A DNA stretch of 64,000 nt, taken from the NCBI GenBank assembly GCA_000708835.1, contig DF237124.1, positions 1 to 64,000 on the forward strand. The letters run 5' to 3'. A program made the translations under genes and the position numbers. Positions 33,401 to 50,770 of the stretch are shown one piece after another (the first letter of the stretch is position 1; each line of letters begins with the position of its first letter). The DNA is from Klebsormidium nitens. Its lineage: Eukaryota > Plantae > Klebsormidiophyceae. The notes below the pieces were generated by a model that was not told the DNA's origin, did not search any database, and saw nothing but the letters and a program-made list of their open reading frames with translations.

Positions 33401-35952
33401 TTTGTGTCAAAATGATGCCCAAGTTGGCTCTTACCCGAGTGAATTCACAGCTTCGCTGAGTTTCTCCGTTGCTTCGGGTTTTGCCTCTTTGACTCAATAC
33501 ACTTCCACATCTGACTCAATACACTTCCACATCTGAAAAATGCTGCAAACGGGCTTCAGAGCCTATGACTAGACTCGCACAAGTACCACTCCTATCTTTG
33601 AGTTTGCCATTTCCGAGCAGAGTGCACATCGGCTTCCTCGAGAGCCTCGGCCTCGGTGCCCCGATCGACGACGAGGACCCTTCCGAGAAGGATGAGTCTA
33701 CCAGACTAGAAGAGGACGAAAAGCTGAGAGCTTTTTCAAAGTGAGTCGTGGTCCATCGATATCGCCACAAACTCTGAGCAAGCTTTCTTAGAAGTGTCTT
33801 GGGTGTTTGCTGATGGCACCCATCTGCTGACCATGTGTTTTTGCTTGGGTCCGCAAAGCGAGTCACCTTGAAAGCTGAGCTTGTACCGAAGCTGCCGTAG
33901 TTGAACTACTGTTGCAGGGGCGCGTGACGCTCAGGAAAGCTTGCAGCCGGTCAATCTATCCATGTCACAATCACACTTTACCGTAGAGTCATGTGCATAG
34001 CAAGAGCATGCACTGCACAGGAGAACGTAATGACTAAGGCTTATTGGCAACCTGCTTTTAACTCGGAAAGTGGGACCGGGCACGTAGCCTGAAAAAGCCT
34101 GGTGTGAGCGACTTGTTCCGGCCGAGCCCCCAGAAAGCCTTCGCTACTAACCTGTTTGAGCTTAAGTTTCTTAACCAACGCTTACCAGCTTCGTCGGGTA
34201 GAAGGGCATCTAAAGAAGCCTGTTTAAGCCTGGTTTTTCCCTGTTTTTGTTAAACATAGATCTGTACGCAAACGCCTCCTTGGCAGGTACATCAACCTGT
34301 GCCAAACCCGCCACCGCCAGGGCACAAAGCGCCGCGACGACACCGCGGGCCGCAAGTCGCGTGCGGATGTCCGAGACCCGCAAACCCCGGCGTCCGACGA
34401 GTCTGAGGCCGACGTGCTAGCCCGCTTCTTAAAGGATTACGTCCTCGAGGACAAAAGCGCGCTCGCCAATAAGGCCGCGCCGCTGTCCGAGGAGGTGTGC
34501 GACCAATGGAACGTGCGCGACAACGCGCCGCTCTACTGGAAGATCCGACTCGCGCTCGCGAACGCGCTGCGCGCGGACCCCGAGGCCAAGGTCTACATCA
34601 CCGGGCACAGCCTGGGCGGCGCGCTCGCCGCGCTCTTCGCGGGGCTGCTGGCGGCCGAGAATGACGTCATGGCGGAGCGCATCGGCGGGCTGTACACGTT
34701 CGGGCAGCCGCGCATCGGGGACTGGTCATTCGCGGAGTACCTGCACAACAAGCTGAACCTGCCGGAGCAGCGCTACGTGCGCCTGATCTACGCCAATGAC
34801 CTGGTGCCACGTGTGCCTTTCAACAGCAGCATGCATCAGTACAAGCACCTGGGGCCGTACCACGTGTCCAACGCGTTCTACGCCGTCACGGTCTGTCACA
34901 TGCCGCATTTCTGATCGCATACTCTGTACGTTCTCGCTCATCGGAGTCGTTTTCAAGGCGCTGCTCAATTCTAGCGTTGGCCAAGTGGTTTGGGAGATGG
35001 GCTGCTGCGCTTCAACTTCGAACCAAGAATCAAGCAGGCATCCTGTTGAGGGAGGAAACGCTTGGGGAGTGCGCGTGTGCGTCGTTCGTGCGGTCGTCTT
35101 TCTGGGCCGTTGACCTTCCAAAGCTGTGCTTTTTGCCAATGCAAGGCAAATCTCAACGTTTGATCTTGAAAGAGCGTTGCATACCAAGGTATAGGAGTAC
35201 TCATTATCGATTAGGAACGGCGTCCTGGGACCGAGCGTGTCACCACCAAATGCAGTCAGATCTAGATTGCCACGTTTAAACTTCAAGAACACTTTCGAAA
35301 CACCCTGCAACTCTCCAGAGAGAGCAAATACCTCTGTAACTATTCTTATGTTGTTTCCCGAGGCTGCGGACCTGACCCCTAAGCACTCGTGCGTCCATTG
35401 CGTTGAGTAGTCCTGGATCGCTTTATGGTTCGTTGATTTTGAGTAAGCTAAGCAGAAAGGCTGGTAGTGCACAATGGACTCGTCCGCTCGCGCTGGTTTT
35501 TCTGAGTGTCTGGGCCCCCGTCTGCAGCATCTTTGGTCGGTTGTGGTTTGCAAATCCGTATTCAAACACTCGATGTGGCGGCAGGCAATCTTGGCCTGTT
35601 AATGAGGACTTTTGCTACACATACGACCAGGCAAAAACCTTTGCCTGACAGCAGATTGATTCCGTTCTCTTCTTCCCGGCAGGTCGGCACATCCACCGAG
35701 CAGCCGGCGATGGGCGTGATAGCTCCGTACCTCACCATCATTCTGGAGTTCTGGTACAACGTAGTCTGGAACGAGATCGCAAACCTGTGCTTTCGGGACG
35801 TTCCAAGACCCCGGGAGACGTGCTTCCAGATGCTCGTCCGAGCGCTTTCTATGTTTGCGCCGAGGATCGCGGCGCACAACCCGGCCAACTACCTGAATGC
35901 GGTGCGGTACGGCTTCCCCCACGGAGAGCAGAAGAAGCAGCCGCCCACTTGA
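30406..35952 (+). CDS. class 3 triacylglycerol lipase (OBL1-like)
   Basis: Exons 30406-30615, 31087-~31189, 31828-32033, 32486-32552, 33044-33176, 33621-33740, 34287-34890 and 35683-35952. Motifs MASKVIYED, DTQAM, VIVAFRGTQPF, VHIGFLE, ITGHSLGGALA, LYTFGQPRIGD, NDLVPRVPF and YKHLG. One internal exon may be missing from this model. Confidence 0.92.
33490..33533. repeat. perfect 22-bp tandem duplication in a lipase intron
   Basis: TGACTCAATACACTTCCACATC x2. Confidence 0.9.
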
Positions 35953-37080: not shown

Positions 37081-38703
37081 TCACACCGAAACTCCGCCGC
37101 AGCAGACAGGGAGACCGGAACGACCGCCTCAGGAGCGTGGAACACCCATCTCTGCAGACCATCACGGCCGCCTGGACCTCCTGAGGATCTGGTGTTGATC
37201 AGTGCTTCAATCTGTGCCGTTTCGCAACTCAGTATAATCTGCGACTCTCTCTGAAGAGTCCAGATTTGTGAACGCTAAGCGCGACACAACGACTGATAAT
37301 GATGGTGTAAGCAGCCAGACAGGCAAGTCTGGACTCCTCTGTCAAGCGAGGAGTGGGTGACAGTCACAGTCCAAGTCAACGATATCTCCGTTCAGGCAAT
37401 TCCCTCCTTTTCCCTAGCTTCGCGACTGCGCCGCTGTTGCAGCTGGTTGGCTTCGCCGCCGCCGTCAATGGAGCAGAAAGCGTCACCCAGGTTGCACTAA
37501 AGTACCTCATCTGTACAGGAGCCATGCCTTTGTTTAACAGCCTGGTCTGTGCACCAATTTTTTCCCTCAGCTGCAGCTTGTGATCGCGCAAGGAGTTACA
37601 TGAATTTCCTTTCGAAGGAACTCGAATATGATCGGCAGATGCCGCTTTGAGCAGCCCAAAACAATTATGCGAAGTAATTGGGCATTCAAACCATCAACGC
37701 TGATGAGATTTTCGCGACAAGCAGCCGGGATCTGCTAGACACCGAACAAGCTGCTTGCACACGTACGTAGCTACCACAAAAGAATGGGCTTTCTGCACAG
37801 GCGCTAGCTTGTTGAGGGTGCGGTTCAAGAGGTCATCTGAGAAACTGAAACATCCTGTAAAGTATCTCCAGTTGCGTCCATAGCTTCTGCAGGGCACAAT
37901 GATCGTCCTGATAGCGGGATAGATGGTGGTGTTTCTCCGGCAACATCGCAGTTTGTCGCCAGCCGGGCGGGCGGCCGGCCCGCGCGTCCGGCCGCGCGCG
38001 CTACTAGCGTACCATGTTCTACTGTCCCTACGAACCTCCTAAACCCCGTAAACCCTCAGGCCTGCCGAGGCGGGCGCCTCCGGCATCGCGAATCCACAAG
38101 TTATTCACAGATTCTGTTGCAAGCGTTATTATGATGCTTCGAATGTCAGAGCGCCTCAAAGGACGTTCACGAGCGAACAGACCCGCAATCACTGCCTTTC
38201 TCAGGCTTTCTGATCAACCTGGGTTTTCCTGATTTGAGCAGCTTCCTACCTCGACAACTGTTGCAGTGATCATCTATTGTAGCACTCTCTGTGTTTGGTC
38301 AGATCAGGTCGAACGCTAGCTTGGACACGAAAATCAAGACAGTGAGGAAGCCCTCGTTTAGTGAGACTCAGTTGGAAACGCTTTTGTTCAAAGAGTCTCC
38401 GTTCGGTGGAAGACGGGACTTGAATTGGAAGAATGGAGAGCGGATGTGCACCCCCTGCGACATTGGTAGACCTCGTGCTGCTTCTGGATCTTCAAAAGGC
38501 GTGCAATGAGACAAGATATTGAGTTGTCTGGTTTGCTAATCCTGGAAACATCAGGAAGTAGGTGTACGGCCACTCTGTTTGGATCACAGTCTTTGCTTTG
38601 TTTTACAGGACTTGATAATTTTGGAAAGTGCTAGATGGATGCGCTGAGAAACCAGGATTGGAGCGTTCGCATGTCCAAGTAGGAAATCAGAATCTCAGTA
38701 AGA

Positions 38704-39723
38704 ATGGGTTGTGTAGGGAGTTGTTTGCTGCCAAGTAAAGAGTCACCGGCAGACGTCAGCAGAACGGGTGACGCTGACGTCCGCAATACGCTGTGTGACC
38801 TTAGTAGTACAAAAGCGTCCGTAACAGCACCGGCTTCCAGTGTACTGGCTTTTCCAAAAACAGAGGATGAGCCAGTGAATTCTACAAAACATTCAGAACT
38901 TCAAGCAAGTCAAGAGTCCAATACCAATTCTGAATTGGAGCAGAAAGGCTGGGGCCGCCTCTCACCACTGCAAGTGCGAGTCATGAAGGCTGCCAGCCAA
39001 AGGGCGAAAGCCTGCTCCGACGCTGCTCTCCCCCGGCTCCAGCAGCGGTTCCGTCGGCTTGGGTACAGCGAAGCGGACCTGACGTCCGCTTTACACTACG
39101 TAACACAAGAGGCGCCCCTGCTGATCCACTTTAAGCCTCAGATGGGCTTTGGGTTCTTTTCCACTAAGACGGTGCTCAAGGCCTTCCTTGAAGACACCCA
39201 TTACCGCAGCACGCGCGAGACGGGGATCGGCGGGGGGGCCCGAGGGGTCTGGCGGGAGAAGAGGGAAAGGATCCTGTTCGCGGGTCTGTACCTTCAAGAC
39301 TCGTCGCCGTTTGAGCATTTCAAGTACGGCTCGCTCAACGTGTTCAAGGAACCGGGGGGGAGCGCCCCCCGCTTCGGTCCGTGTTACATCGAGCTCAAAT
39401 CTGACGTCATGGAGCGATGCACCTTCGTCTACCGGCCGTCGTTCGACGACCTGCACCAAGTCCCTGGCACCCGCGAGAACTTCGCCCATACGTTGGCGGA
39501 ATTCGACGATAAGGAGATAGCGTGCCTCGTGGAGAGGCGTCCGTTTAAGTTGTTGAATCCTACAGTGGGCGGAGATGTTCTGGTAGAAGTCCAGATACAC
39601 GGTCCGCTGGAGTTCAAGCGCGACATCAAGGAGCTGCGCTTCCCCCGTTCGACAAAGCGGAAGGTTCAGAAGCGGTTACAGAGGTGGGCTGACACAAACG
39701 GGTTTGCGGCGAGTTGTTTCTGA
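38704..39723 (+). CDS. DUF3626-like protein with N-terminal MGCxxS acylation motif; intronless CDS
   Basis: 339-aa ORF. The motifs LIHF, HYRS..ETG..GG, RE..LF..LY, KYGSLN, GGSAPRFG..Y.EL, RCTF, EVQIHGPL and RDI match the DUF3626 pattern as I recall it. Confidence 0.75.
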   Translation: MGCVGSCLLPSKESPADVSRTGDADVRNTLCDLSSTKASVTAPASSVLAFPKTEDEPVNSTKHSELQASQESNTNSELEQKGWGRLSPLQVRVMKAASQRAKACSDAALPRLQQRFRRLGYSEADLTSALHYVTQEAPLLIHFKPQMGFGFFSTKTVLKAFLEDTHYRSTRETGIGGGARGVWREKRERILFAGLYLQDSSPFEHFKYGSLNVFKEPGGSAPRFGPCYIELKSDVMERCTFVYRPSFDDLHQVPGTRENFAHTLAEFDDKEIACLVERRPFKLLNPTVGGDVLVEVQIHGPLEFKRDIKELRFPRSTKRKVQKRLQRWADTNGFAASCF

Positions 39724-40549: not shown

Positions 40550-43500
40550 TCATCCCTTCGGCTCGAGCGCTTTCACAACCTGTTGTATACTCTCGAATTG
40601 CGACCGCTCCTTCAGCAGCACTTTGCCAAACGCTAGCGCTTTTTTCTCGCAGCTTGCGCGAACGTCGGGATCGGCGATGCTCTCCAGGTCTTCTACGTGG
40701 GCGATCCCGACAATCCGCCTGCAGACAGAAGCGCGGCCAAATCGTCTAAGAATCGTGCAAGAATGGCAAAACACAAGATTTGCTGGCGCCTTGTCAAAAT
40801 GGCGAAAAAAGACGAGTGTGCACAAAGCTAGGCTGGCTGTTGGAGGATCTACAGAGGAGAAGGGCTGCTTCGCGCTGGCCCCATCCCAAAAGTCTGCAAG
40901 AGAATGGGAACCATAAACGCGCACAGAAGATACAGATGAATAGACCGGACCCTCAGTCTGACACTATGTTGATGATGATGAGCCGGCGGCAAAGCGAAAA
41001 GCAGGTCGAGACTGGCCCACATACATAACTAACTAGATTGCGGGACTCTCTCACTTCACTATCTCAAACTCTTCAGTTTACTATAAGCTGTTCGTTTGCA
41101 GAGATACTTCCCCAAGACGCGGGGCTCGGGCCACCATAAGTCGCATGCAAACTCCGAATGAAGCAAAGGATGCGGGACAGCGCTTTTTACCTGACAATCT
41201 TGGCGCCCGCGAAGCCCAGCGAGTCCTGGAAGAGGTCGCCGAGGAAGGCCTTTTGGTATTCCGCCAGCGTGCGGTCGCCGGTGCCGAACAGGAGCGTGGG
41301 CGTGAGGTCGCCCGGGGACTCCAAGCTAACAAATTTCTGCGGAGAAAAACAGAGATCCTGATTGAAATGCCTGAACCTGCTTGCAGGGCGTCTGCTTGCT
41401 GCGCAGACGAGACGTCGCCCTTTTGAGTGCCTCGGTTCAGGAGGCTATGAAGCCCAGCTTCTTACTGGGCAACCTCCGCGAATGCTTTGCAAACGAACGG
41501 AAAAACATTCACGCCAAGAGCGCAAATCCCAAACAAAGTCGGCGTCCTTCTGCAAAGAACACGGTCGCAAAGAAGGAATTGCTAAGTTCTCGTTGGCGGC
41601 GGCGACTTTGCCACGTGGCAGCACGCTCACCGACCACAGGTCCACGAACTTCTCGGCGAACAGGGCCCACGTTTCGATGATCGTCTTCGCGATCCAGTAC
41701 TTGCAGTCGTTCCTGGCGCCAGGGCTGGTCGCGTGCCCGTCCTGACTGTAGTACGCGAGGATCAAGTTGGCCAGGAAAGCGCCAATGTCGAAGCCCATGG
41801 GGCCGTAGAAGGCGAACTCGGGGTCGATCATCTGCGCGGAAAACACGGGAGGGTTTGATCAGAGTCGAGGCGCAACCGAGTGCGCACATGGCAGGGAAGC
41901 CACTTGTCAAAATAGCCAGGGTAAAAGCGCAGGCGCATACAAAGCCGGTTTTCATCGACACCTTTCGTGTTACAGTTGAGCGTCCTCTTCAAAGATAAGG
42001 GGCGAGCTAAGTCGGTGTCCGTCACTTTTTTTTCATGTTTGCAACGCTTCCATCGAGCATCTGCAGCCCTCACCTGGGACTTTCCGGCTCCTGTTTACCA
42101 CACATTGCGGTCACACACTGCCCCGACGCCATCTCATTCATAGCGCGACCAACGTAGTAGCGCGTTCCGAGCCACAACCTACATTGCCAGACTCCCCAAT
42201 GATTGCCAGCTTTGAGGAACCAGGTCAGTCCAACCCAAAAGGCCCCGTCCAAAGCTTACCTGCGTGGAGGTGTCCGTGACCATGATACTGCCCGTGTGCA
42301 GGTCGCCGTGCACCAGGGCCTCCGCCTGCTCCGTGAACTTCTTTTTCAGCGCCGTGATGGCGACCTTCAGCGGCACGTCCGACCGGAGCGCGGCCGCTTC
42401 CGCGTCCAGCTGCGGCGACGTCCAGTGGTTGTTGGCGGCTTGCGCGTACGGCTCCGTGAAGATCACCTGGGGGAGAAAACTGACTTTCAGAACTCGACAA
42501 CCTACGTGGTTTTAGAACCTCATGGAGCTAAAAGAGCGCCCGAACGACGATACGCTGTCAACAGGTGAACCTAGAGGGTGGGTGGCTGGTAGAATCTGCG
42601 TTGATGAAAATGGTTAAAGAGAAGATGTACAACCAAAGGAAGGTAATATGGGTAGCGTGGCAAGTATCAATATCTAGATTGAGACATCCTCTCTCCGGAG
42701 GCTTGAGCGGCAACCCGCGGGCCGATAGACCCCCGATCCTCCACCTGAATAGAATCCAAATCGTAAAGTAGAAAAGAGAACCCGAACCCAAAACTCCAAA
42801 CCCCAAAACTCAAACATCCTTGTTCAGTAACTTACCTGCTCCGTGAGCCTGCACAGCTCGACGTTGACCACAAACTTGGCGACGGCCGCCTTGTGCTGCG
42901 CAGTGTCGAGCGCGAGGAGGGAGGTGCTGAACAGAGTGCGCGCCAGGAAGGTGGACACGTGGTCGGCCAGGAGGGGGTACACGTGGCCGGCGATGAGGCC
43001 CTTGCGCAGGATGATGTGCGGCGGCTCCAGGTAGCGCATCACGAACAGGGCGCGCGAGCGGTCCACGTGGTACACCTGCGGAGAAAGGATTGGCTTTTCA
43101 TAGGCTAGGATTATGGGGATTTTCATCTTTTGAAGCGGTTTGTTAGGCTCGCTCTACAGGCTACTGATACACGACAATCGCTCTTCGTAATGTGGACCAT
43201 GCACAGACCGCAAAGAGAGCCGAACTTTGCACGAAAGTCTCGGTGAAAAGCGATACGAAGTTTTTGGTAGCAAGAGGAGGTGCCAAACACGAAGTCGTAT
43301 TCTGACCTATGCAAATGGGCACAGTCTGTGAGATTGCGGGCAACAAGTTCACTTTTTTAAAGGGGAAGGCAATCAGCGGCACGGGTTCCCACAAAAATTA
43401 GGGCAAAGTGGGCTTGCTAATGCTTCGACAATCACTCGAGCGGCCTCAAGGGCAGAGCCCACCTCCTTTCCCTTTCAGACCAGACGGGTCATGAAGTCTA

Positions 43501-46500
43501 CGCCGTGAAGCGGAATCCACAGACTCCCTTGGCAACAAGCATTATAAGTACTTTCAAGCAGAGCGTTGCAGATGTAGTCGGTTCGACATAATCTTCGCTT
43601 CAGCAATCAACTCGTTCGAAACAAAGCAAGAATCTTTTTGAACTGCGTTTCCGGACGTTCCCTTCTCCCCGCCTCACCTCGGGCACGTGCTGCGGCACGA
43701 GGCGCCCCTCCTCTTTCAGCGCGAGCGCCTCGAACCACGACCGGTCCACCGTCAACGGCCACGATTCGCCGACGCACCGCACGTACGGCAGCGATTGCTT
43801 CAGCACGCACGTCCACTGCGGCCCCTCCACTATGAACACCAGGTTTAGATTCCCGTCCCCGACTTCCCGCACTTTCCAGTCGGTCGGCTTTCCGCCCAAC
43901 CTCGTTGCGAGGTCCGGCGTTTTGGTCGCAATGTAGTCGACGAGAGTCTCAGGGTTGAAACCTACGAAGAGGGGTTTTACGTCCCCGGCTTCGGTGGCGA
44001 GGGTTGGGGGGTTTTGGGCGGGCGGGGCGGGGGCGACGCGGGCCAGGAAGGCGGGGATGTCGAACTCCGTTGCGCCGTCGGCCTTGTAGATGACGCCCTG
44101 CGAGAAGGAGGATGGTATCCCGTGACAATCTGCAATTAAGACGCAAGCGGTTTGCTTATATTGCGCCCACAGAACAATCGACAACGATGCAGCCCCGACA
44201 GCATCAGTTGACAGGAAGATTGAAACTTCAACCAAACTCCATCTGCTAAATTGAAAAACAGTAGCGAATAAGGCGTCGAACAGCCCGCCTGAAATCGCCC
44301 CGAGGGCAGAAGTTGAGAAAAGGAGTTTCAAGAGGCTACTCGCAACAAAACTAAGAGCAGACTCTGCGACCTGCGTGCCAGAATCGGGCCTTCCTTTACC
44401 ACCATGAAGCGGCTGGTTGCAATGCATGCAAAGTCTATTTTAGCGAAAGACATTCTAGAGAATAACCGGACGCTGCTGGGAAACTTTCCAAGCAGAAGCT
44501 AGTCGTGTTCTGCCAGACTGCCGTGAACAAAGCGCGGGGAGCCCACCTTTTCCGTGATGATGCCAGCGATGAGGTCAGCGGGAGTGACGTCGAAGGAGGG
44601 GTTCCAAACGTCGATGCCGGCCGGAGCAATGGGATCGCCACGGCCGCCGTTGGCGTGGGTGAGCTCCTTGGGGTCTCTTTGCTCTACACACGAGATGGGG
44701 GAGCAAACGCTTATGCGGTGGGCTGCAAGTGCCGCTGTCAACGTCCCTTCGTTATCTTGTAAATACCTGATACGTCCTCCTGTTTCTCCTTATAAATGGT
44801 TCTTGGCGAGCTCGAAAGAGAAGGAAGCGCCCGGAAAGCAATGCCGCACGGAAAGTTGGCCTCTCGAAGCATCGAAAGGGCGACGTCGTCTCAAGTGCAG
44901 AGCAATGAGAATCATATAAATTCCCTTGGGGCATTGATGAGGAGAATCGAAACGTTCATGGTAAATGGAAACACGATCGAGCCAGGAACCCCCAACAATT
45001 CTAGACCCCAACAAACACATCCACAACTTCTCCAACTCACCAATATGGATCTCGGCGCCTGAGTGAATGTCCAGATCAATCGACGTCACTGGCGCCGCCA
45101 CAAAGAACGGCACCCCGTGGTACTTCGCCCCGATCGCGAGCGAGTACGTCCCGATCTTGTTTGCCGTATCTCCGTTCGCCGCAATCCGATCGGCGCCCAC
45201 AACGATCGCATCCACGCCCCGAGTGGCCCCAAACGCCGCAGCCGCAGAGTCGGCAACTAGGATGGCGGGAATCTTCTCGTACACGAGCTCGTAAGCTGTG
45301 AGGCGCGAGCCCTGGTTGTATGGGCGGGTCTCCGTTGCAATAGCGGTCTCCAACTTGCCGGCGGCGTGAAGGGAACGGATGACACCGAGGGCGGTTCCGT
45401 ATGCAGCGGTGGCCAGGCTGCAGGGAGGCGGGAAAAATGCCCTCGGATCGGAAAGGTTTCGGCGAAGCTTTCGTGCACAGGTGATACGACAGGTGCGTCA
45501 GTGAAGACGGCTGTAGCTCGGTGCCGTCTTGATTACAAGCTCACAAGGACATGAGGCGTCCTCCTCAGAACAACTCGCTTGATCTCCGGAAATCGAAGTT
45601 CCCACCGCCCAAAACGCAGTGATGATTTTCCACATATGAGGAACCGTCGATCGGCAGTACTCAGCCAGATATCATTGTTCGAACAGGCAGATCCCTCGCC
45701 GCTAGAAGCCCTCGCTGGAACTAGAGAACAGATTCCAAGCATGGACGTCCAATTCTTGCTCGCTTCCAATTTGACCCGCCCAAGGAGTCCAACTTGACCG
45801 CCGAAAGGGACCCCGATACGTCAAACCGGCGCCCCAAGCAAACTCTGTACTGCCCACCTGCCTGTGTTGCAGTGCGTCATCACGCGCAGCTTCTCCTTCT
45901 TTGTGGCCGCCTTCACGATCGCCTCCGCGCCGTTCGCCCCAATCGCACGGTTGGCCGCCACGTCATCCACCAGCATTTGCTCCGCAGAGACCACGAATGC
46001 GTCGATGACGCTCTGCGCGGAAGCTTCCGGCTGGTCCGCCGCAGTCCGAGTGACTTCGGACAGCTGCTTGGCGGCCTCGCCCAGGTTGACGGCAGTTGGA
46101 CGGCTGCAACGAAAAGTCGATAGTCAGCTTGAGCTGGACAGTAACAGGAAGCAATATCGTTTGTTGTTCGAATCTCTGCATTTTTCACCTTTGAAGGAGT
46201 GAACCCCAGCCAAAATCGTAGTAAGAATCATGCGGCTGTAGTAAGCCTGACACGTTCTGCAGTGCTTCTTTCGCGCAAAGGCTGCTCAGGAGCACTAAGC
46301 CCTGTAAATGGAATCTAGCCGACCTCACCGGGTAGCTGCCTGACTCATGTTCACCGACTCCTGGTTTTGTCTCACCTAAGCACACCTCCCTTCGACAAAG
46401 TCGCTACGTGTAGACTGCTGTGAGTACTGTTGGGTTCAAGTAGCCTCGTAAGCTGCTAACATTGAGGAGAAACTTTTCCTCTCCTCTGTTCTCTAACACG

Positions 46501-47728
46501 GGGCTGAAGCGACTCTGGCAATTTGATCCCATGCACCCGTACTTAGTATGAACTTTCCTTCCAACTTTGGCCCCCTTGCCACCAAATCTTACTTGGGCAG
46601 CCTTTGTTGGGACCAATGCCACTTCGGAACGATCTCCTATTGTCAATGTACAATCCTTCGTGAGGATCAAAATTCAGGTTTATGAGAGCTCTCACCTTGA
46701 CACTAGGTACTGCAGCCGCTCCACGATATAGGCGCCGGTCGACTTTGCATCGGGCGTCTCAGGCGGCGAGCTCACTAGCTCTGCGGCTAAGGCCAAAGCT
46801 GCCGCGATTGCAATCGCCGGTGCCCCCCGCACCACCATGTCCTTGATAGCGTGCCTGGACAGGTGGCACACTGTGGTTGGTCGGGTTGCTTCTCGAGGCA
46901 AATAAAAAGATATAGGAACCAACACTACTTCTCCAAGTCTTACAAACAGGCTTGAATGCCGTCACAGTAAGTTCTGTTTACAACTTCAAAGTCAAAAGAC
47001 AAGAGCTCTCGTCCGATAAGATGATACATCTTGTGTGGAAAAGATAGATAAGAGTATAATGTTCACCACCGCGCCTGCGCCAAACCTCAATGCTTTCGAA
47101 TTTCCAAGACTCACCATGCCGCTTCTGCTGTCGGGATGTCGATGTACTCGCTCACGTGGGGAAGATGCCTCTGCAGAATATAGAATGGTTTCAAAAGAAA
47201 GAAAGAAAAACACCACCATCCCTCCAATTTGCATTGCTGCGCCCCATTGTAGACATGAGCCCCAATTCTTCGTGTTCACTCTACTAGATTTAAGTCCTAT
47301 TGAACAAAAGGAGAGAACAGTTCTACGTTGAGCTTAATATACCACCACAAGGCAGGGCACCCAGCCATTTATTGTCGTCTAAATAAATGGCTGAAGTGGC
47401 TAGATCTATAGGTTGATGTGCTTCGTTTTTCATAATGCCACCATCGGGCTACGCCATTTGCGAAGTCTTTTCTCCACCATCTCCTGCTATGGACAATCAG
47501 AGGCAAGGCCAGCATTGCAAAACAACACAGTACAGCCCACTTGCAACCAGAAGCAGACACCTGGCGGCCGCTGATAGCACTGCAAGACTTTCGCAGGCTT
47601 AAGAAATCAGAACTCGAACGTCGTCATACCTGGTCCAGAAGCTCGAGCTTGCCCCGAACATACTTGATCGCCTGGAGCACGCCATCATTCTTCTTCTCAA
47701 TATGGACGCCGAGCACTTCGCTCGCCAT
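40550..47728 (-). CDS. MRI1-MTK: fused methylthioribose-1-phosphate isomerase (MRI1/MtnA) - methylthioribose kinase (MTK/MtnK), ~818 aa, 12 exons
   Basis: Exons 47728-47630, 47170-47115, 46854-46696, 46103-45858, 45417-45041, 44683-44547, 44097-43678, 43075-42836, 42466-42260, 41831-41631, 41336-41191 and 40718-40550. They total 2457 nt and all GT-AG junctions are phase-consistent. MRI1 motifs: [67 protein letters not shown] motifs: [54 protein letters not shown]. Confidence 0.93.
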
Positions 47729-47982
47729 GGCTTGGCCACAACAGAGTCAGATTGACGGCGCCAACGAAATGTTCTGAGCTCTCCGCTCCACTTGCTCAGA
47801 ATGCTTGATCCAGCATCAAAAATCTCACCCCAATCCTGACGAATCAGTGCAATGGTCCCGACCTCCCGGATCAAGCAATGCTGCCACCGTCTTGGCAGCT
47901 GATGGCGAAGAGGCTTCACAAAGAAAATATGTGTTCATTGAACCAAGCCATTGGCGTGGAACCTCAGCCTTCCAAGTTCAAG

Positions 47983-48303: not shown

Positions 48304-50770
48304 ATGCAGGATACGGCAGGAGATATGTTCATGGGTGCCTGGATGGACCCTAGCCTGATGACGCCAGAGCCGCTCCTGACAGGAGACCAGAACGCTGCGT
48401 GCCAGTGGCAGTGGCCCGCTTTTGAGAAGACAGAGGAGAGGTAAGGCTTTCACAAGGAAACGCTAAGTCTTGTGGTTATGACTAGATTTCTGTCGGACAT
48501 GAACAATATGATGACGGCGCGGCGCTTAGTCACTTCTTGTTCTGCTTGCTTGACTTACCAGATCTGTGGGCTCTTCTTCCAGAAAGCTGCCCCAGTATCC
48601 ATTTGCATCAGTTACATTCCATAGCAAGATGCCTTTTCCATCATCAGGTTGCATAATTTGCCAATTAAACGTGCCCTGGAATTGTTGTCAGCCAGCACTG
48701 AATTCTGGACAGGGGCTCGACAGACCTGCGAGCTGCGGAATATTATCTAGCATAATTATTGGGCCATCCCCGTAGGCCCAGCCATTATCTGTTAGAGTAC
48801 CATGTTCTGTCAACATTGTGGGCCTTCTGAGCTCCATGGCTTGCATTCTGACTCAGCTTTCAGCAATTTCTAAGGTGTGCAGTGCCCTCGGTTCTTTATG
48901 CTTTTGTTCCTTCTTGATGGCTGGTCTCAATCATGACTGCCATTGAGTAGTGCATCTACTGCCCAGATTCGACGGAAAGGAGGTTGGGGAATGTAGATTT
49001 TGCCGGGGGCAGAGGCCTTAGGCTTTGTGCCCAATGCCCTGTAGCGGAAGATTCCAGTTTGGGTAGCCGCCGACGATGTCGAATGCCTGCCCTTTCCTGC
49101 TCATGTGGCATGAAGCAGAGGTAGAGACTGAGGACAAGTTTGCAGAGAGCTGACAGTCGAATAAGCACGCAGCATGTGCCAGACCTCTTGTCGCCATACC
49201 TGGAACATCAGCAGAATGAGCAACATGTGAATTTTGCAGTGGACAAAGCGAGAAGGGCCCTTCATGCAAGAAGTCGGGCAGCAGAAAGAGGTGAGTGACT
49301 CGGTGGACCAGCTCGTCACCATGGGAGTACGGAGACTAGCTTTTTGACAAAGGCAACAGCATGCTTTGTGGAGCTCCGGTTGCGAAGCAGCAAAGCAGCC
49401 CCCTGAATTGAAGAGGTTTGGGGGGACTGAGCCATATTGGGTAGCCTACCCTATGTAAAAGGGACCAATGCAAAGGCGAAGAGTAGCATAACCCTAGGAC
49501 GCCTCAAGGAAGCCACCAAGGCAAGGATGCCCTTAGAGCATAGGGTAGGTTCTCAGCAATGCTGCAGTCCCGAACTTGCTCTCTGTCAACTGGGAGCTGT
49601 TAGCATTATTGAACCATAGACGGCATCCCCGAGTTAGCAACGTCATTAATTGTAGGGAGTTGCAGAGTTTGACAGCCTTCATTCTCAGAGCAACCATAAG
49701 CAAGCTTGAGGCAAGCAATGCTGGATTTGAGTGCTCCACCTTCGCTCCATATCCTAACCTGAGCACCTGCGGTTCTAGTCGGAAGCATTTGATTGTGCGT
49801 TGTGCTTTGAGCGGCGTTAATCAGAGTGGTTAAATTGCATGTCCTGCTGCTTGCAGGCAAAGAGGGGAGCAGTCAGTGGCTGCTGCAGACAAGGCTGACC
49901 GGGAAAGGGAGCGCCGCAACCGGCTGCACGCAAAGTTCATGGAGTTGAGCCAGCTGCTAGACCCGGGGAGGCCACCCAAGACGGACAAGTCCACCATCCT
50001 CACAGATGCGGTCCGCGTTATCGGACAGCTGCGGAACGAGGCGGAGCAGCTCAAGGAGTCCAACACCCAGCTTAGGAGCAGCATCAAGGACCTAAAGGTA
50101 GGCGGTGCTTTTGTTCCGCTGCTGGAATGCTCCATGCGAGAGTGCTCTGCTCGATTGCTGCTGCTCTGTGGTATGTTGTCCTGGAGGCGGCACCGAATCG
50201 ACCGTCTGGTCCAGAAGCAGGCACCAAGTATTGAGCATTTTGGGAACTTGTATTGCTGGTCGAGGGTTTGTATTTGGTAGGGTTTGCATGCAATATGTCC
50301 ATGACTAGACTATGTTCTGCGGAGCGGAAGGGTATTTTCCAAGAACACTGTGCTGACCCAAGTGTTGCCAGCATTGTGGATACCTCAGGCTCAATGGTTG
50401 CTCCTCGCTTGCTTCGAGTCTGTTGAGCTCTGACATGCTCTATTGCAAGCTTGGGAGAAAGTTCTTTTCGTCACAGGAAGCTAACGTTCATGTTTGTTGT
50501 CTATTCCAGGTTGAGAAGAATGAGTTGCGCGAGGAGAAGGTCCGCCTCAAGAACGACAAGGACCGGCTAGACTTGCAGGTCAAGACCATGATGCCGCCCA
50601 GCTTCGGCCTGCCCCAGGCAGCAATGGCAGCCGCATTCGCTGCTCAGCAGCAGCATAAGCTGCAGGCGCCGGGCCAGGCAGCTATGGGCAACTTTGGCAT
50701 GTGGCAGTTCCTTCCCCCACAAGTACTGGACACGTCTCAGGACCATGTGCTGAGGCCGCCGGCTGCTTAG
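48304..50770 (+). CDS. bHLH transcription factor, subgroup IVc (ILR3/bHLH34/104/115-like)
   Basis: Exons ~48304-48440, 49240-49290, 49857-50097 and 50510-50770. Contains GSRKR, RERERRNRLHAKFMEL..LDPGRPPKTDKSTILTDAVRV, the leucine zipper EKNELREEK and the C-terminus MWQFLPPQVLDTSQDHVLRPPAA*. Confidence 0.9.

What the first reader, a model, noticed from the sequence alone, without database searches (positions are those of the whole stretch)
40550..47728. One gene fuses two consecutive methionine-salvage enzymes (isomerase-kinase, MtnA-MtnK)
Seen in sequence: the MRI1 exon ending IITEK (donor 44546) splices in phase 0 to the exon at 44097. That exon holds the MRI1 C-terminal tail ([18 protein letters not shown]), a Pro/Ala linker ([18 protein letters not shown]) and the MTK N-terminus ([11 protein letters not shown]), with no stop and no Met in between. 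The kinase therefore has no start codon of its own within this exon, and the junction lies inside an exon. Established: MTK makes MTR-1-P and MRI1/MTI isomerises it, and flowering plants encode the two separately. I recall an mtnA-mtnK fusion reported from the ciliate Tetrahymena, but I cannot verify that here. Inference: a bifunctional, possibly substrate-channelling Yang-cycle enzyme in a green-lineage genome, which is either ancestral or an independent fusion.
Basis: partly seen in the sequence, partly recalled or inferred. Interest (0 to 1): 0.85.

Follow-up and report, generated by a model that had tools for sequence, protein, structure and literature searches.

The report
Known MtnA-MtnK methionine-salvage fusion gene
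This streptophyte alga makes one spliced mRNA for an 818-residue protein joining the isomerase and the kinase of methionine recycling, but this fusion (mtnAK) was described in 2009 and is the normal state in green algae, mosses and ferns, so it is ordinary.

Summary
On the minus strand, a 12-exon gene with only GT-AG introns (47728..40550; 2457-nt coding sequence, 818 aa) encodes a complete MtnA/MRI1 isomerase, a 21-residue Pro/Ala linker and a complete MtnK kinase. The join lies inside exon 7 (44097..43678), with no stop and no Met. Spliced contigs from four runs of four studies show all nine introns laid on, including 44098-44546. Single contigs of 2789 and 2850 nt carry the whole coding sequence.

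The catalytic residues of both enzymes are present.

The mtnAK fusion was described in Tetrahymena, with cDNA support, and noted in Ostreococcus, Micromonas and Phaeodactylum (PMC2759508, 2009). My searches found about 800-aa proteins with the same two Pfam families in chlorophytes, charophytes, liverworts, mosses, lycophytes, ferns and a Ginkgo model.

Trees of each half follow the species tree. The window protein sits where Klebsormidium is expected. The separate seed-plant MTI and MTK genes nest inside the fused clade, so the fusion is ancestral and seed plants split it.

Channelling is untested. The scan's notes held no earlier mention of this fusion. Interest is low.

The parts
47630..47728 (-). 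Exon 1 (ATG at 47728; 33 codons, MtnA N-terminus ...[16 protein letters not shown])
   Evidence: Sequence and GT donor. Splice 47630/47170 is seen in contigs of 4 runs. An in-frame stop lies 6 codons upstream of the ATG.
47115..47170 (-). Exon 2 (56 nt, [19 protein letters not shown])
   Evidence: AG/GT borders. Joints 47170/47630 and 46853/47114 are seen in 4 runs.
46696..46854 (-). Exon 3 (MtnA, ...[10 protein letters not shown]...)
45858..46103 (-). Exon 4 (MtnA; holds catalytic Cys183 at 45871-45869 in THCNTG)
   Evidence: It aligns to human MRI1 residues 90-171, with the Cys at human C168. TIGR00512 positions 86-161.
45041..45417 (-). Exon 5 (MtnA core; catalytic Asp263 at 45191-45189 in GADR)
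   Evidence: Pfam IF-2B 7.9e-33. TIGR00512 200.7 bits. Human MRI1 4LDQ residues 173-296, 2.8e-52, with the Asp aligned to D248. Splices.
44547..44683 (-). Exon 6 (MtnA, ends ...IAGIITEK)
43678..44097 (-). Exon 7, the junction exon: MtnA tail (44097-44044), linker (44043-43981) and MtnK N-terminus (43980-43678) with the G-loop GDGNLN (43860-43843) and Lys458 (43800-43798)
   Evidence: Open frame without stop or Met. Residues 44-140 align to Arabidopsis MTK 2PYW residues 6-103. TIGR01767 positions 4-99. Joint 44096/44546 is seen in 4 runs. The same single exon occurs in a relative's genomic contig, L001.
42836..43075 (-). Exon 8 (MtnK)
   Evidence: TIGR01767 positions 100-177. Splices.
42260..42466 (-). 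Exon 9 (MtnK catalytic loop HGDLHTG; Asp633 at 42304-42302)
   Evidence: Pfam APH. Aligns to 2PYW residues 185-252 and to 2OLC, with the Asp aligned to B. subtilis D233. Splices.
41631..41831 (-). Exon 10 (MtnK, IDPEF metal-binding motif; Asp650 at 41825-41823)
   Evidence: 2PYW residues 253-318, 3.1e-25, and 2OLC with the Asp at D250. Joint 41831/42260.
41191..41336 (-). Exon 11 (MtnK)
   Evidence: AG/GT borders and frame. tblastn with orthologues. Lies outside the stretch laid on, but the contig lengths fit it.
40550..40718 (-). Exon 12 (MtnK C-terminus; stop TGA at 40552-40550)
   Evidence: TIGR01767 positions 350-400..

Best explanation
This is the orthologue, in a streptophyte alga (earlier notes of this scan name Klebsormidium nitens), of the known bifunctional MtnAK protein of the methionine salvage (Yang) cycle. 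One promoter drives one 12-exon mRNA, which is translated into one 818-residue polypeptide. The C-terminal MtnK domain (residues 398-818) would phosphorylate 5-methylthioribose with ATP to give MTR-1-phosphate. The N-terminal MtnA domain (residues 1-376) would isomerise that product to methylthioribulose-1-phosphate. The two domains are joined by a short, unconserved, presumably flexible Pro/Ala linker. Shown here: the gene structure, the single spliced transcript, full-length similarity of each half to the separate enzymes, presence of their catalytic residues, and wide conservation of the fusion. Inferred: both activities, equal amounts of the two enzymes as the benefit of fusion, and any substrate channelling.
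For: Gene model: 12 exons, all introns GT-AG, one open frame of 818 codons.

Transcript: all 9 introns within 41750-47740 are spliced exactly as modelled in 4 runs from 4 studies. Single contigs of 2789 nt (X10) and 2850 nt (X8) run from exon 1 to beyond exon 9, and their lengths match the 2457-nt coding sequence plus untranslated ends.

Completeness: residues 13-379 align to Arabidopsis MTI residues 4-368 of 374 (59% identity). Residues 397-815 align to Brassica MTK residues 5-415 of 418 (57% identity).

Family models: the best NCBIfam hit for every exon tested is TIGR00512 (mtnA) or TIGR01767 (MTRK), at consecutive profile positions. Pfam gives IF-2B and APH.

Catalytic residues align to solved structures: Cys183 and Asp263 to human MRI1 C168 and D248, and Asp633 and Asp650 to B. 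subtilis MtnK D233 and D250. The G-loop and Lys458 are present.

Orthology: 57-60% identity over the full length to about 800-aa proteins with PF01008+PF01636 from lycophytes, ferns, liverworts, mosses, Closterium and Chara.

Literature: mtnAK has the same domain order in Tetrahymena (779 aa, one cDNA clone covering both ends) and was noted in Ostreococcus, Micromonas and Phaeodactylum (PMC2759508). It is cited in a 2018 review (PMC6302742).
Against: No enzyme assay exists for any MtnAK protein in the papers I found, so bifunctionality rests on homology. The runs are only guessed to be RNA. Contigs cannot show transcript starts or ends, so a minor kinase-only transcript cannot be excluded. Small separate contigs lie inside introns 5, 6, 7 and 9, as expected for unspliced precursor. 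Cleavage of the protein in the linker cannot be tested with these tools. The organism name comes from unchecked notes of this scan. My trees only show that the placement is consistent with it.
Confidence: 0.93

Rival explanations
1. The locus also, or mainly, yields separate enzymes. A transcript ending in or retaining intron 6 would give an MtnA-only protein, and a transcript starting inside intron 6 would give a kinase-only protein.
For: Short separate contigs lie inside intron 6 (44191-44487 in X1, 44192-44427 in X4). An ATG at 44427 is in frame with exon 7 with no stop in between. Retention of intron 6 would stop translation after 15 extra codons, leaving an almost complete MtnA.
Against: Similar small contigs lie in introns 5, 7 and 9, so intron 6 is not special. 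No loose ends or alternative joints were reported at exon 7 (tables 5-7). The spliced contigs that cross the junction are the long ones. The first Met after the junction is residue 511, past the G-loop and Lys458. The single-exon junction is conserved in a relative and the fusion is conserved across the green lineage.
Confidence: 0.05
2. The fusion is translated as one chain but cut in the linker, so the cell holds two separate enzymes as in flowering plants.
For: The linker is unconserved, of variable length (9-47 residues in 26 orthologues) and probably disordered. Such stretches are accessible to proteases.
Against: No conserved cleavage motif appears in the linkers. Nothing here speaks for cleavage. 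Long retention of a fusion that is always cut would be hard to explain beyond co-expression.
Confidence: 0.05
3. The join is an artefact: two neighbouring genes merged by read-through or by mis-assembly.
For: None found. This is the generic concern for any predicted fusion, and the Tetrahymena paper raised it too.
Against: The junction lies inside one exon with no stop, no Met and no intergenic DNA. Independent runs from 4 studies carry the same spliced junction. A relative's genomic contig has the same exon.
Confidence: 0.01
4. The N-terminal half is not MtnA but another member of the eIF2B-related family (a translation factor subunit or a ribose-1,5-bisphosphate isomerase), as some genome annotations of this fusion say.
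For: Pfam names only the broad family IF-2B. Chlorella sorokiniana and Micromonas records call it a translation initiation factor fusion.
Against: TIGR00512 (mtnA equivalog) scores far above the R15P isomerase and eIF2B models on exon 5: 200.7 bits against 80.1 and 45.5. The best solved match is human MRI1 at 2.8e-52, against about 1e-9 for eIF2B alpha. The MtnA catalytic Cys and Asp are present. The half is 59-63% identical end to end to plant MTI.
Confidence: 0.02

Closest known systems
MtnAK of Tetrahymena thermophila (XP_001031773; Salim, Negritto and Cavalcanti 2009, PMC2759508), and the fusions noted there in Ostreococcus tauri, Micromonas and Phaeodactylum
   Same: Same two enzymes in the same order (MtnA N-terminal, MtnK C-terminal), similar length (779 against 818 aa), and one transcript covering both halves.
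   Different: A different lineage (a streptophyte alga). I did not place the Tetrahymena protein in my trees, so common origin with the ciliate fusion is not tested here.
Annotated PF01008+PF01636 proteins of other streptophytes and chlorophytes (for example Chara braunii CBR_g23696, Closterium, Marchantia paleacea, Ceratodon, Selaginella, Diphasiastrum, Adiantum, Chlorella, Volvox)
   Same: Collinear over the full length at 50-60% identity, and both halves group with them in trees. These are orthologues.
   Different: Only the linker differs in sequence and length. The window's linker is Pro/Ala-rich and 21 residues long, against 9-47 elsewhere.
Separate MTI1 (At2g05830) and MTK (At1g49820; structure 2PYW) of Arabidopsis and other seed plants
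   Same: Each half matches the separate enzyme end to end at 57-63% identity, with the same catalytic motifs.
   Different: Seed plants carry two genes. In my trees they nest inside the fused clade, so they look like products of a gene split.
Other methionine-salvage fusions: MtnBD of Tetrahymena and MtnBC (DEP1) of Arabidopsis (PMC2759508, PMC3698126)
   Same: Fusion of enzymes of the same pathway into one chain.
   Different: Different enzymes. MtnBD gained an extra activity, and nothing suggests that here.

Membership tests
MtnA / MRI1 (S-methyl-5-thioribose-1-phosphate isomerase; TIGR00512, Pfam PF01008) | Sequence match to the mtnA equivalog model, stronger than to the paralogous eIF2B and R15P-isomerase models | tested here: met
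   Exons 4 and 5 alone give 65.6 + 200.7 bits at profile positions 86-161 and 163-287 of 335. The whole-protein cut-off is 279, and the other five MtnA exons were not scored. The paralogue models score 80 bits or less. Identity to plant MTI is 59-63% end to end.
MtnA / MRI1 (S-methyl-5-thioribose-1-phosphate isomerase; TIGR00512, Pfam PF01008) | Catalytic Cys and Asp (human C168 and D248; the numbering and roles are from my own knowledge of the MRI1 and B. subtilis MtnA structures) | tested here: met
   Cys183 in THCNTG aligns to residues 166-171 of 4LDQ. Asp263 in GADR aligns to position 248 of 4LDQ.
MtnA / MRI1 (S-methyl-5-thioribose-1-phosphate isomerase; TIGR00512, Pfam PF01008) | MTR-1-P to MTRu-1-P isomerase activity | not testable with these tools
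   Needs an enzyme assay.
MtnK (S-methyl-5-thioribose kinase; TIGR01767, Pfam PF01636) | Sequence match to the MTRK equivalog model over its length | tested here: met
   Five exons match consecutive profile positions 4-99, 100-177, 178-245, 247-312 and 350-400 of 401, with 106.2, 74.4, 81.3, 77.2 and 47.9 bits. The rough sum is 387, against a cut-off of 275. Exon 11 was not scored.
MtnK (S-methyl-5-thioribose kinase; TIGR01767, Pfam PF01636) | Kinase motifs: glycine loop GDGNLN, ATP-binding Lys, catalytic HGDLH Asp and DxE metal-binding Asp (the roles are from my own knowledge of the 2OLC and 2PYW structures) | tested here: met
   All are present and aligned to 2PYW and 2OLC: G-loop at 438-443, Lys458, Asp633 at B. 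subtilis D233 and Asp650 at D250.
MtnK (S-methyl-5-thioribose kinase; TIGR01767, Pfam PF01636) | ATP-dependent MTR kinase activity | not testable with these tools
   Needs an enzyme assay.
MtnAK fusion (Salim et al. 2009) | Complete MtnA followed by complete MtnK in one reading frame | tested here: met
   818-codon frame with the junction inside exon 7. Both halves are full length.
MtnAK fusion (Salim et al. 2009) | One transcript covering both halves | tested here: met
   Single spliced contigs of 2789 and 2850 nt, and the junction splice in 4 runs of 4 studies. The runs are only guessed to be RNA, but nine precisely removed GT-AG introns show processed transcripts.
MtnAK fusion (Salim et al. 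2009) | Orthology with other fused proteins rather than an independent join | tested here: met
   Collinear full-length matches. Both domain trees place it with fused streptophyte proteins: a streptophyte clade at 98 SH-aLRT in the MtnA tree, and an open but compatible position in the MtnK tree. These are quick trees; no AU test was run.

The most novel reading that the evidence does not exclude
The fusion is the ancestral state of the whole green lineage. It was kept through charophytes, bryophytes, lycophytes and ferns, and it was split into separate MTI and MTK genes only within seed plants. The split may have happened twice, because a Ginkgo gene model is still fused while conifers and angiosperms have separate genes. 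I found no paper that dates this split. If real, it is a datable gene fission in the pathway that recycles the precursor of ethylene and nicotianamine.
Probability: 0.45. Interest if true: 0.35.

Novelty: already known. Interest (0 to 1): 0.15.

Why it matters
It matters little as a discovery. The fusion has been in the literature since 2009 and in many genome annotations. It is useful as a correct annotation, because several records call this protein a hypothetical protein, a methylthioribose kinase only, or a translation initiation factor fusion. No MtnAK protein appears to have been characterised biochemically in the papers I could search, so whether fusion gives channelling or only equal expression remains open. 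The seed-plant split of an otherwise conserved fusion is a small evolutionary question that could be followed up.

Tried and rejected
- **Exon 2.** My first guess, around 47010-46960 ([11 protein letters not shown]...), was rejected because no AG acceptor fits. The real 56-nt exon is at 47170-47115 and was later confirmed by the spliced contigs.
- **Pfam on the junction exon.** Pfam gave nothing on exon 7, exon 8, exon 10 or exon 12 taken alone. NCBIfam TIGR01767 and the PDB sequences did match them.
- **Full-length protein.** The spliced 818-aa protein has no reference and long sequences may not be typed, so it could not be sent to the family, structure or database tools. I searched exons apart and did full-length comparisons offline. 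For the same reason I did not fold it. A fold of an orthologue would not have changed the verdict.
- **Earlier scan notes.** They held nothing near this place and nothing on MtnA or MtnK. Genome-wide notes gave only the organism name.
- **Literature.** Searches for the fusion in Klebsormidium or Physcomitrella, and for Yang-cycle papers mentioning a fused MTI/MTK, found nothing relevant.
- **Neighbouring genes.** The neighbours are a DUF3626 gene, a bHLH gene and a class-3 lipase gene. None belongs to methionine salvage, so there is no pathway cluster.
Full report
**1. The observation**

Reading the minus strand, the exon that encodes ...[15 protein letters not shown] ends at 44547 and is followed by GT at 44546-44545. 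An AG lies at 44099-44098. The next exon begins at 44097 with GGC GTC ATC (GVI). It stays open for exactly 140 codons, down to GAG at 43680-43678, followed by GT. Both borders are phase 0.

That exon holds the last 18 residues of the isomerase, a 21-residue Pro/Ala-rich linker (44043..43981) and the first 101 residues of the kinase, including [11 protein letters not shown]. It contains no stop and no Met.

**2. The gene**

I used fused orthologues as guides and read the borders directly. This gave a 12-exon model on the minus strand:
- Exon 1: 47728-47630
- Exon 2: 47170-47115
- Exon 3: 46854-46696
- Exon 4: 46103-45858
- Exon 5: 45417-45041
- Exon 6: 44683-44547
- Exon 7: 44097-43678
- Exon 8: 43075-42836
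- Exon 9: 42466-42260
- Exon 10: 41831-41631
- Exon 11: 41336-41191
- Exon 12: 40718-40550

All eleven introns are GT-AG. The coding sequence is 2457 nt and the protein is 818 residues. The ATG at 47728 is preceded by an in-frame stop six codons upstream.

**3. Transcription**

The look-up of sequencing runs listed 20 runs from 7 studies that hold 22-53% of the sampled words of 41750-47740. Exons make up about a third of that stretch.

I laid the contigs of four runs from four studies on the stretch. All nine introns inside it appear as joints at exactly the modelled borders, each with CT..AC ends on the + strand, which is GT..AG for a minus-strand gene. This includes the joint 44096/44546 that skips 449 bases.

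In runs X10 and X8, single contigs of 2789 and 2850 nt run from exon 1 to beyond exon 9. In X10, 647 nt of the contig precede exon 9 and 201 nt follow the ATG. That equals exons 10-12 (516 nt) plus a 131-nt 3' end, and a 5' leader, so the contig holds the full 2457-nt frame.

The runs are only guessed to be RNA. Nine precisely removed introns nevertheless show processed transcripts. Short separate contigs lie within introns 5, 6, 7 and 9, which fits unspliced precursor. No alternative joint or loose end was reported at exon 7.

Retaining intron 6 would end translation after 15 extra codons. The first Met downstream of the junction is residue 511, past the kinase glycine loop and ATP-binding lysine. 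A kinase-only product is therefore not expected from this mRNA.

**4. What the two halves are**

Pfam finds IF-2B on exon 5 and APH on exon 9.

NCBIfam is more specific. Exons 4 and 5 hit TIGR00512 (mtnA equivalog) with 65.6 and 200.7 bits at consecutive positions. This is far above the ribose-1,5-bisphosphate isomerase and eIF2B models. Exons 7, 8, 9, 10 and 12 hit only TIGR01767 (MTRK) at consecutive positions 4-400, with a rough sum of 387 bits against a cut-off of 275.

Against solved structures:
- Exon 5 matches human MRI1 (4LDQ) at 2.8e-52, and exon 4 matches its residues 90-171.
- Exons 7, 9 and 10 match Arabidopsis MTK (2PYW) and B. subtilis MtnK (2OLC).
- From those alignments, Cys183 and Asp263 sit at human C168 and D248. 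Asp633 and Asp650 sit at B. subtilis D233 and D250. The roles of these residues are from my own knowledge of those structures.

Offline alignment shows that each half is complete. Residues 13-379 cover Arabidopsis MTI residues 4-368 of 374. Residues 397-815 cover Brassica MTK residues 5-415 of 418. In exon 7, the kinase similarity starts at residue 6 of the Arabidopsis protein.

**5. How it most likely works**

By homology, the C-terminal domain phosphorylates methylthioribose and the N-terminal domain isomerises the product. These are two consecutive steps between MTA nucleosidase and MtnB.

The order on the chain (A then K) is the reverse of the reaction order. The linker is short and unconserved: 9-47 residues in 26 orthologues, with no shared motif.

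The structure and expression are shown. The activities, fixed 1:1 stoichiometry as the benefit of fusion, and any channelling are inferred.

**6. Comparison with what is known**

Salim et al. 2009 (PMC2759508) described mtnAK in Tetrahymena. It is 779 aa, with MtnA N-terminal and MtnK C-terminal, and one cDNA clone hits both ends. They noted the same fusion in Ostreococcus tauri, Phaeodactylum tricornutum and two Micromonas genomes, where it was mis-annotated as a translation factor fusion. The fusion is repeated in a 2013 paper and a 2018 review.

A search of 1.84 billion representative proteins with the junction exon alone returned several proteins of 760-976 aa matched at about residues 350-500.

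A word-indexed search with one of them, from the fern Adiantum, listed 120 best hits. All but two carry PF01008+PF01636 at about 800 aa. They come from:
- ferns, lycophytes and a Ginkgo model
- a moss and liverworts
- Chara, Closterium, Spirogloea and Chlorokybus
- many chlorophytes (Chlorella, Volvox, Gonium, Chlamydomonas, Coccomyxa, Trebouxia, Chloropicon, Bryopsis, Prasinococcus and a pedinophyte)
- Pavlova and Chrysoparadoxa

The window's protein is 57-60% identical to the streptophyte proteins over its full length. A relative's genomic contig has the same exon 6-7-8 structure, with the junction inside one exon.

**7. Ancestral or independent**

I cut 27 fused proteins at the linker. I added separate seed-plant MTK or MTI sequences and outgroups, and built one tree per domain. 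These were quick IQ-TREE runs with SH-aLRT support only.

Both trees follow the species tree.
- In the MtnA tree, the window's protein is the first branch of a streptophyte clade (support 98). It is sister to Zygnematophyceae, Chara and land plants. That is where Klebsormidium would be expected, and earlier notes of this scan name K. nitens. I did not verify the name independently.
- The separate seed-plant MTI genes (support 98) and MTK genes (support 97) nest inside the fused land-plant proteins.

So the fusion is ancestral, and seed plants split it. The fused Ginkgo model groups with the separate conifer MTI genes (support 97). Either the split happened more than once or that gene model merges two genes. 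I could not check which.

**8. Surroundings**

The neighbours are a DUF3626 gene (38683-39720, +), an IRO3/ILR3-like bHLH gene (about 49834-50767, +) and a class-3 lipase gene (34228-34911, +). No other methionine-salvage gene is nearby. tblastn with orthologues found no second copy of either enzyme in the window.

**9. Verdict**

The feature is real, expressed and correctly read. It is a typical orthologue of a fusion published in 2009 and present throughout green algae and non-seed plants. Novelty: already known. Interest: 0.15.

The only mildly new point is the apparent split of the fusion within seed plants, for which I found no paper. The scan's own notes had no earlier mention of this fusion.

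Noticed in passing
P0162 (Ginkgo Gb_28479), P0365 (Wollemia MTK), P0493 (Cryptomeria MTI), P0444 (Taxus MTI); trees: A Ginkgo gene model is still an MtnA-MtnK fusion (760 aa, 29-residue linker), while conifers and angiosperms have separate genes. Its MtnA half groups with the conifer MTIs (support 97). Either the fusion was split more than once in seed plants or the Ginkgo model merges two genes.
   Followed up: partly
P0159 (Musa troglodytarum, 777 aa) and P0165 (Turnera subulata, 817 aa); Two angiosperm proteins of fusion-like length carry only kinase-type Pfam families and cover half of the fused query. They look like doubled MTK gene models (tandem duplicates merged), not MtnAK.
   Followed up: no
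window 44029-44058 (minus-strand linker region of exon 7): In runs X1 and X4 the spliced contigs break inside the GC-rich linker, with two contigs overlapping by about 30 nt, while X8 and X10 cross it in one contig. This is probably an assembly-graph break at the low-complexity CCCGCC run. No sequence difference was reported.
   Followed up: no
window 49834-50277 and 50357-50767 (+): A bHLH gene whose domain also matches the IRO3 iron-related bHLH model (PF00010 at 3.8e-09; PF23177 at 5.3e-05, below its cut-off) lies about 2 kb upstream of the MtnAK start on the opposite strand. In flowering plants such factors control iron-deficiency responses, which include Yang-cycle genes. This is probably coincidence.
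   Followed up: no
window 38683-39720 (+): A 346-codon open stretch starting MGCVGSC... (a possible N-myristoylation/palmitoylation start) carries a DUF3626 domain (1.2e-24).
   Followed up: no
window 44427-44098 (minus strand, intron 6): The 3' part of intron 6 is open in the frame of exon 7 from an ATG at 44427 (ORF 43600..44427). This is the only way a kinase-only protein with its own start could arise. No transcript evidence for it was seen.
   Followed up: partly
window 34228-34911 (+): A class-3 lipase domain (PF01764, 6.7e-24) lies in an open stretch of 228 codons.
   Followed up: no
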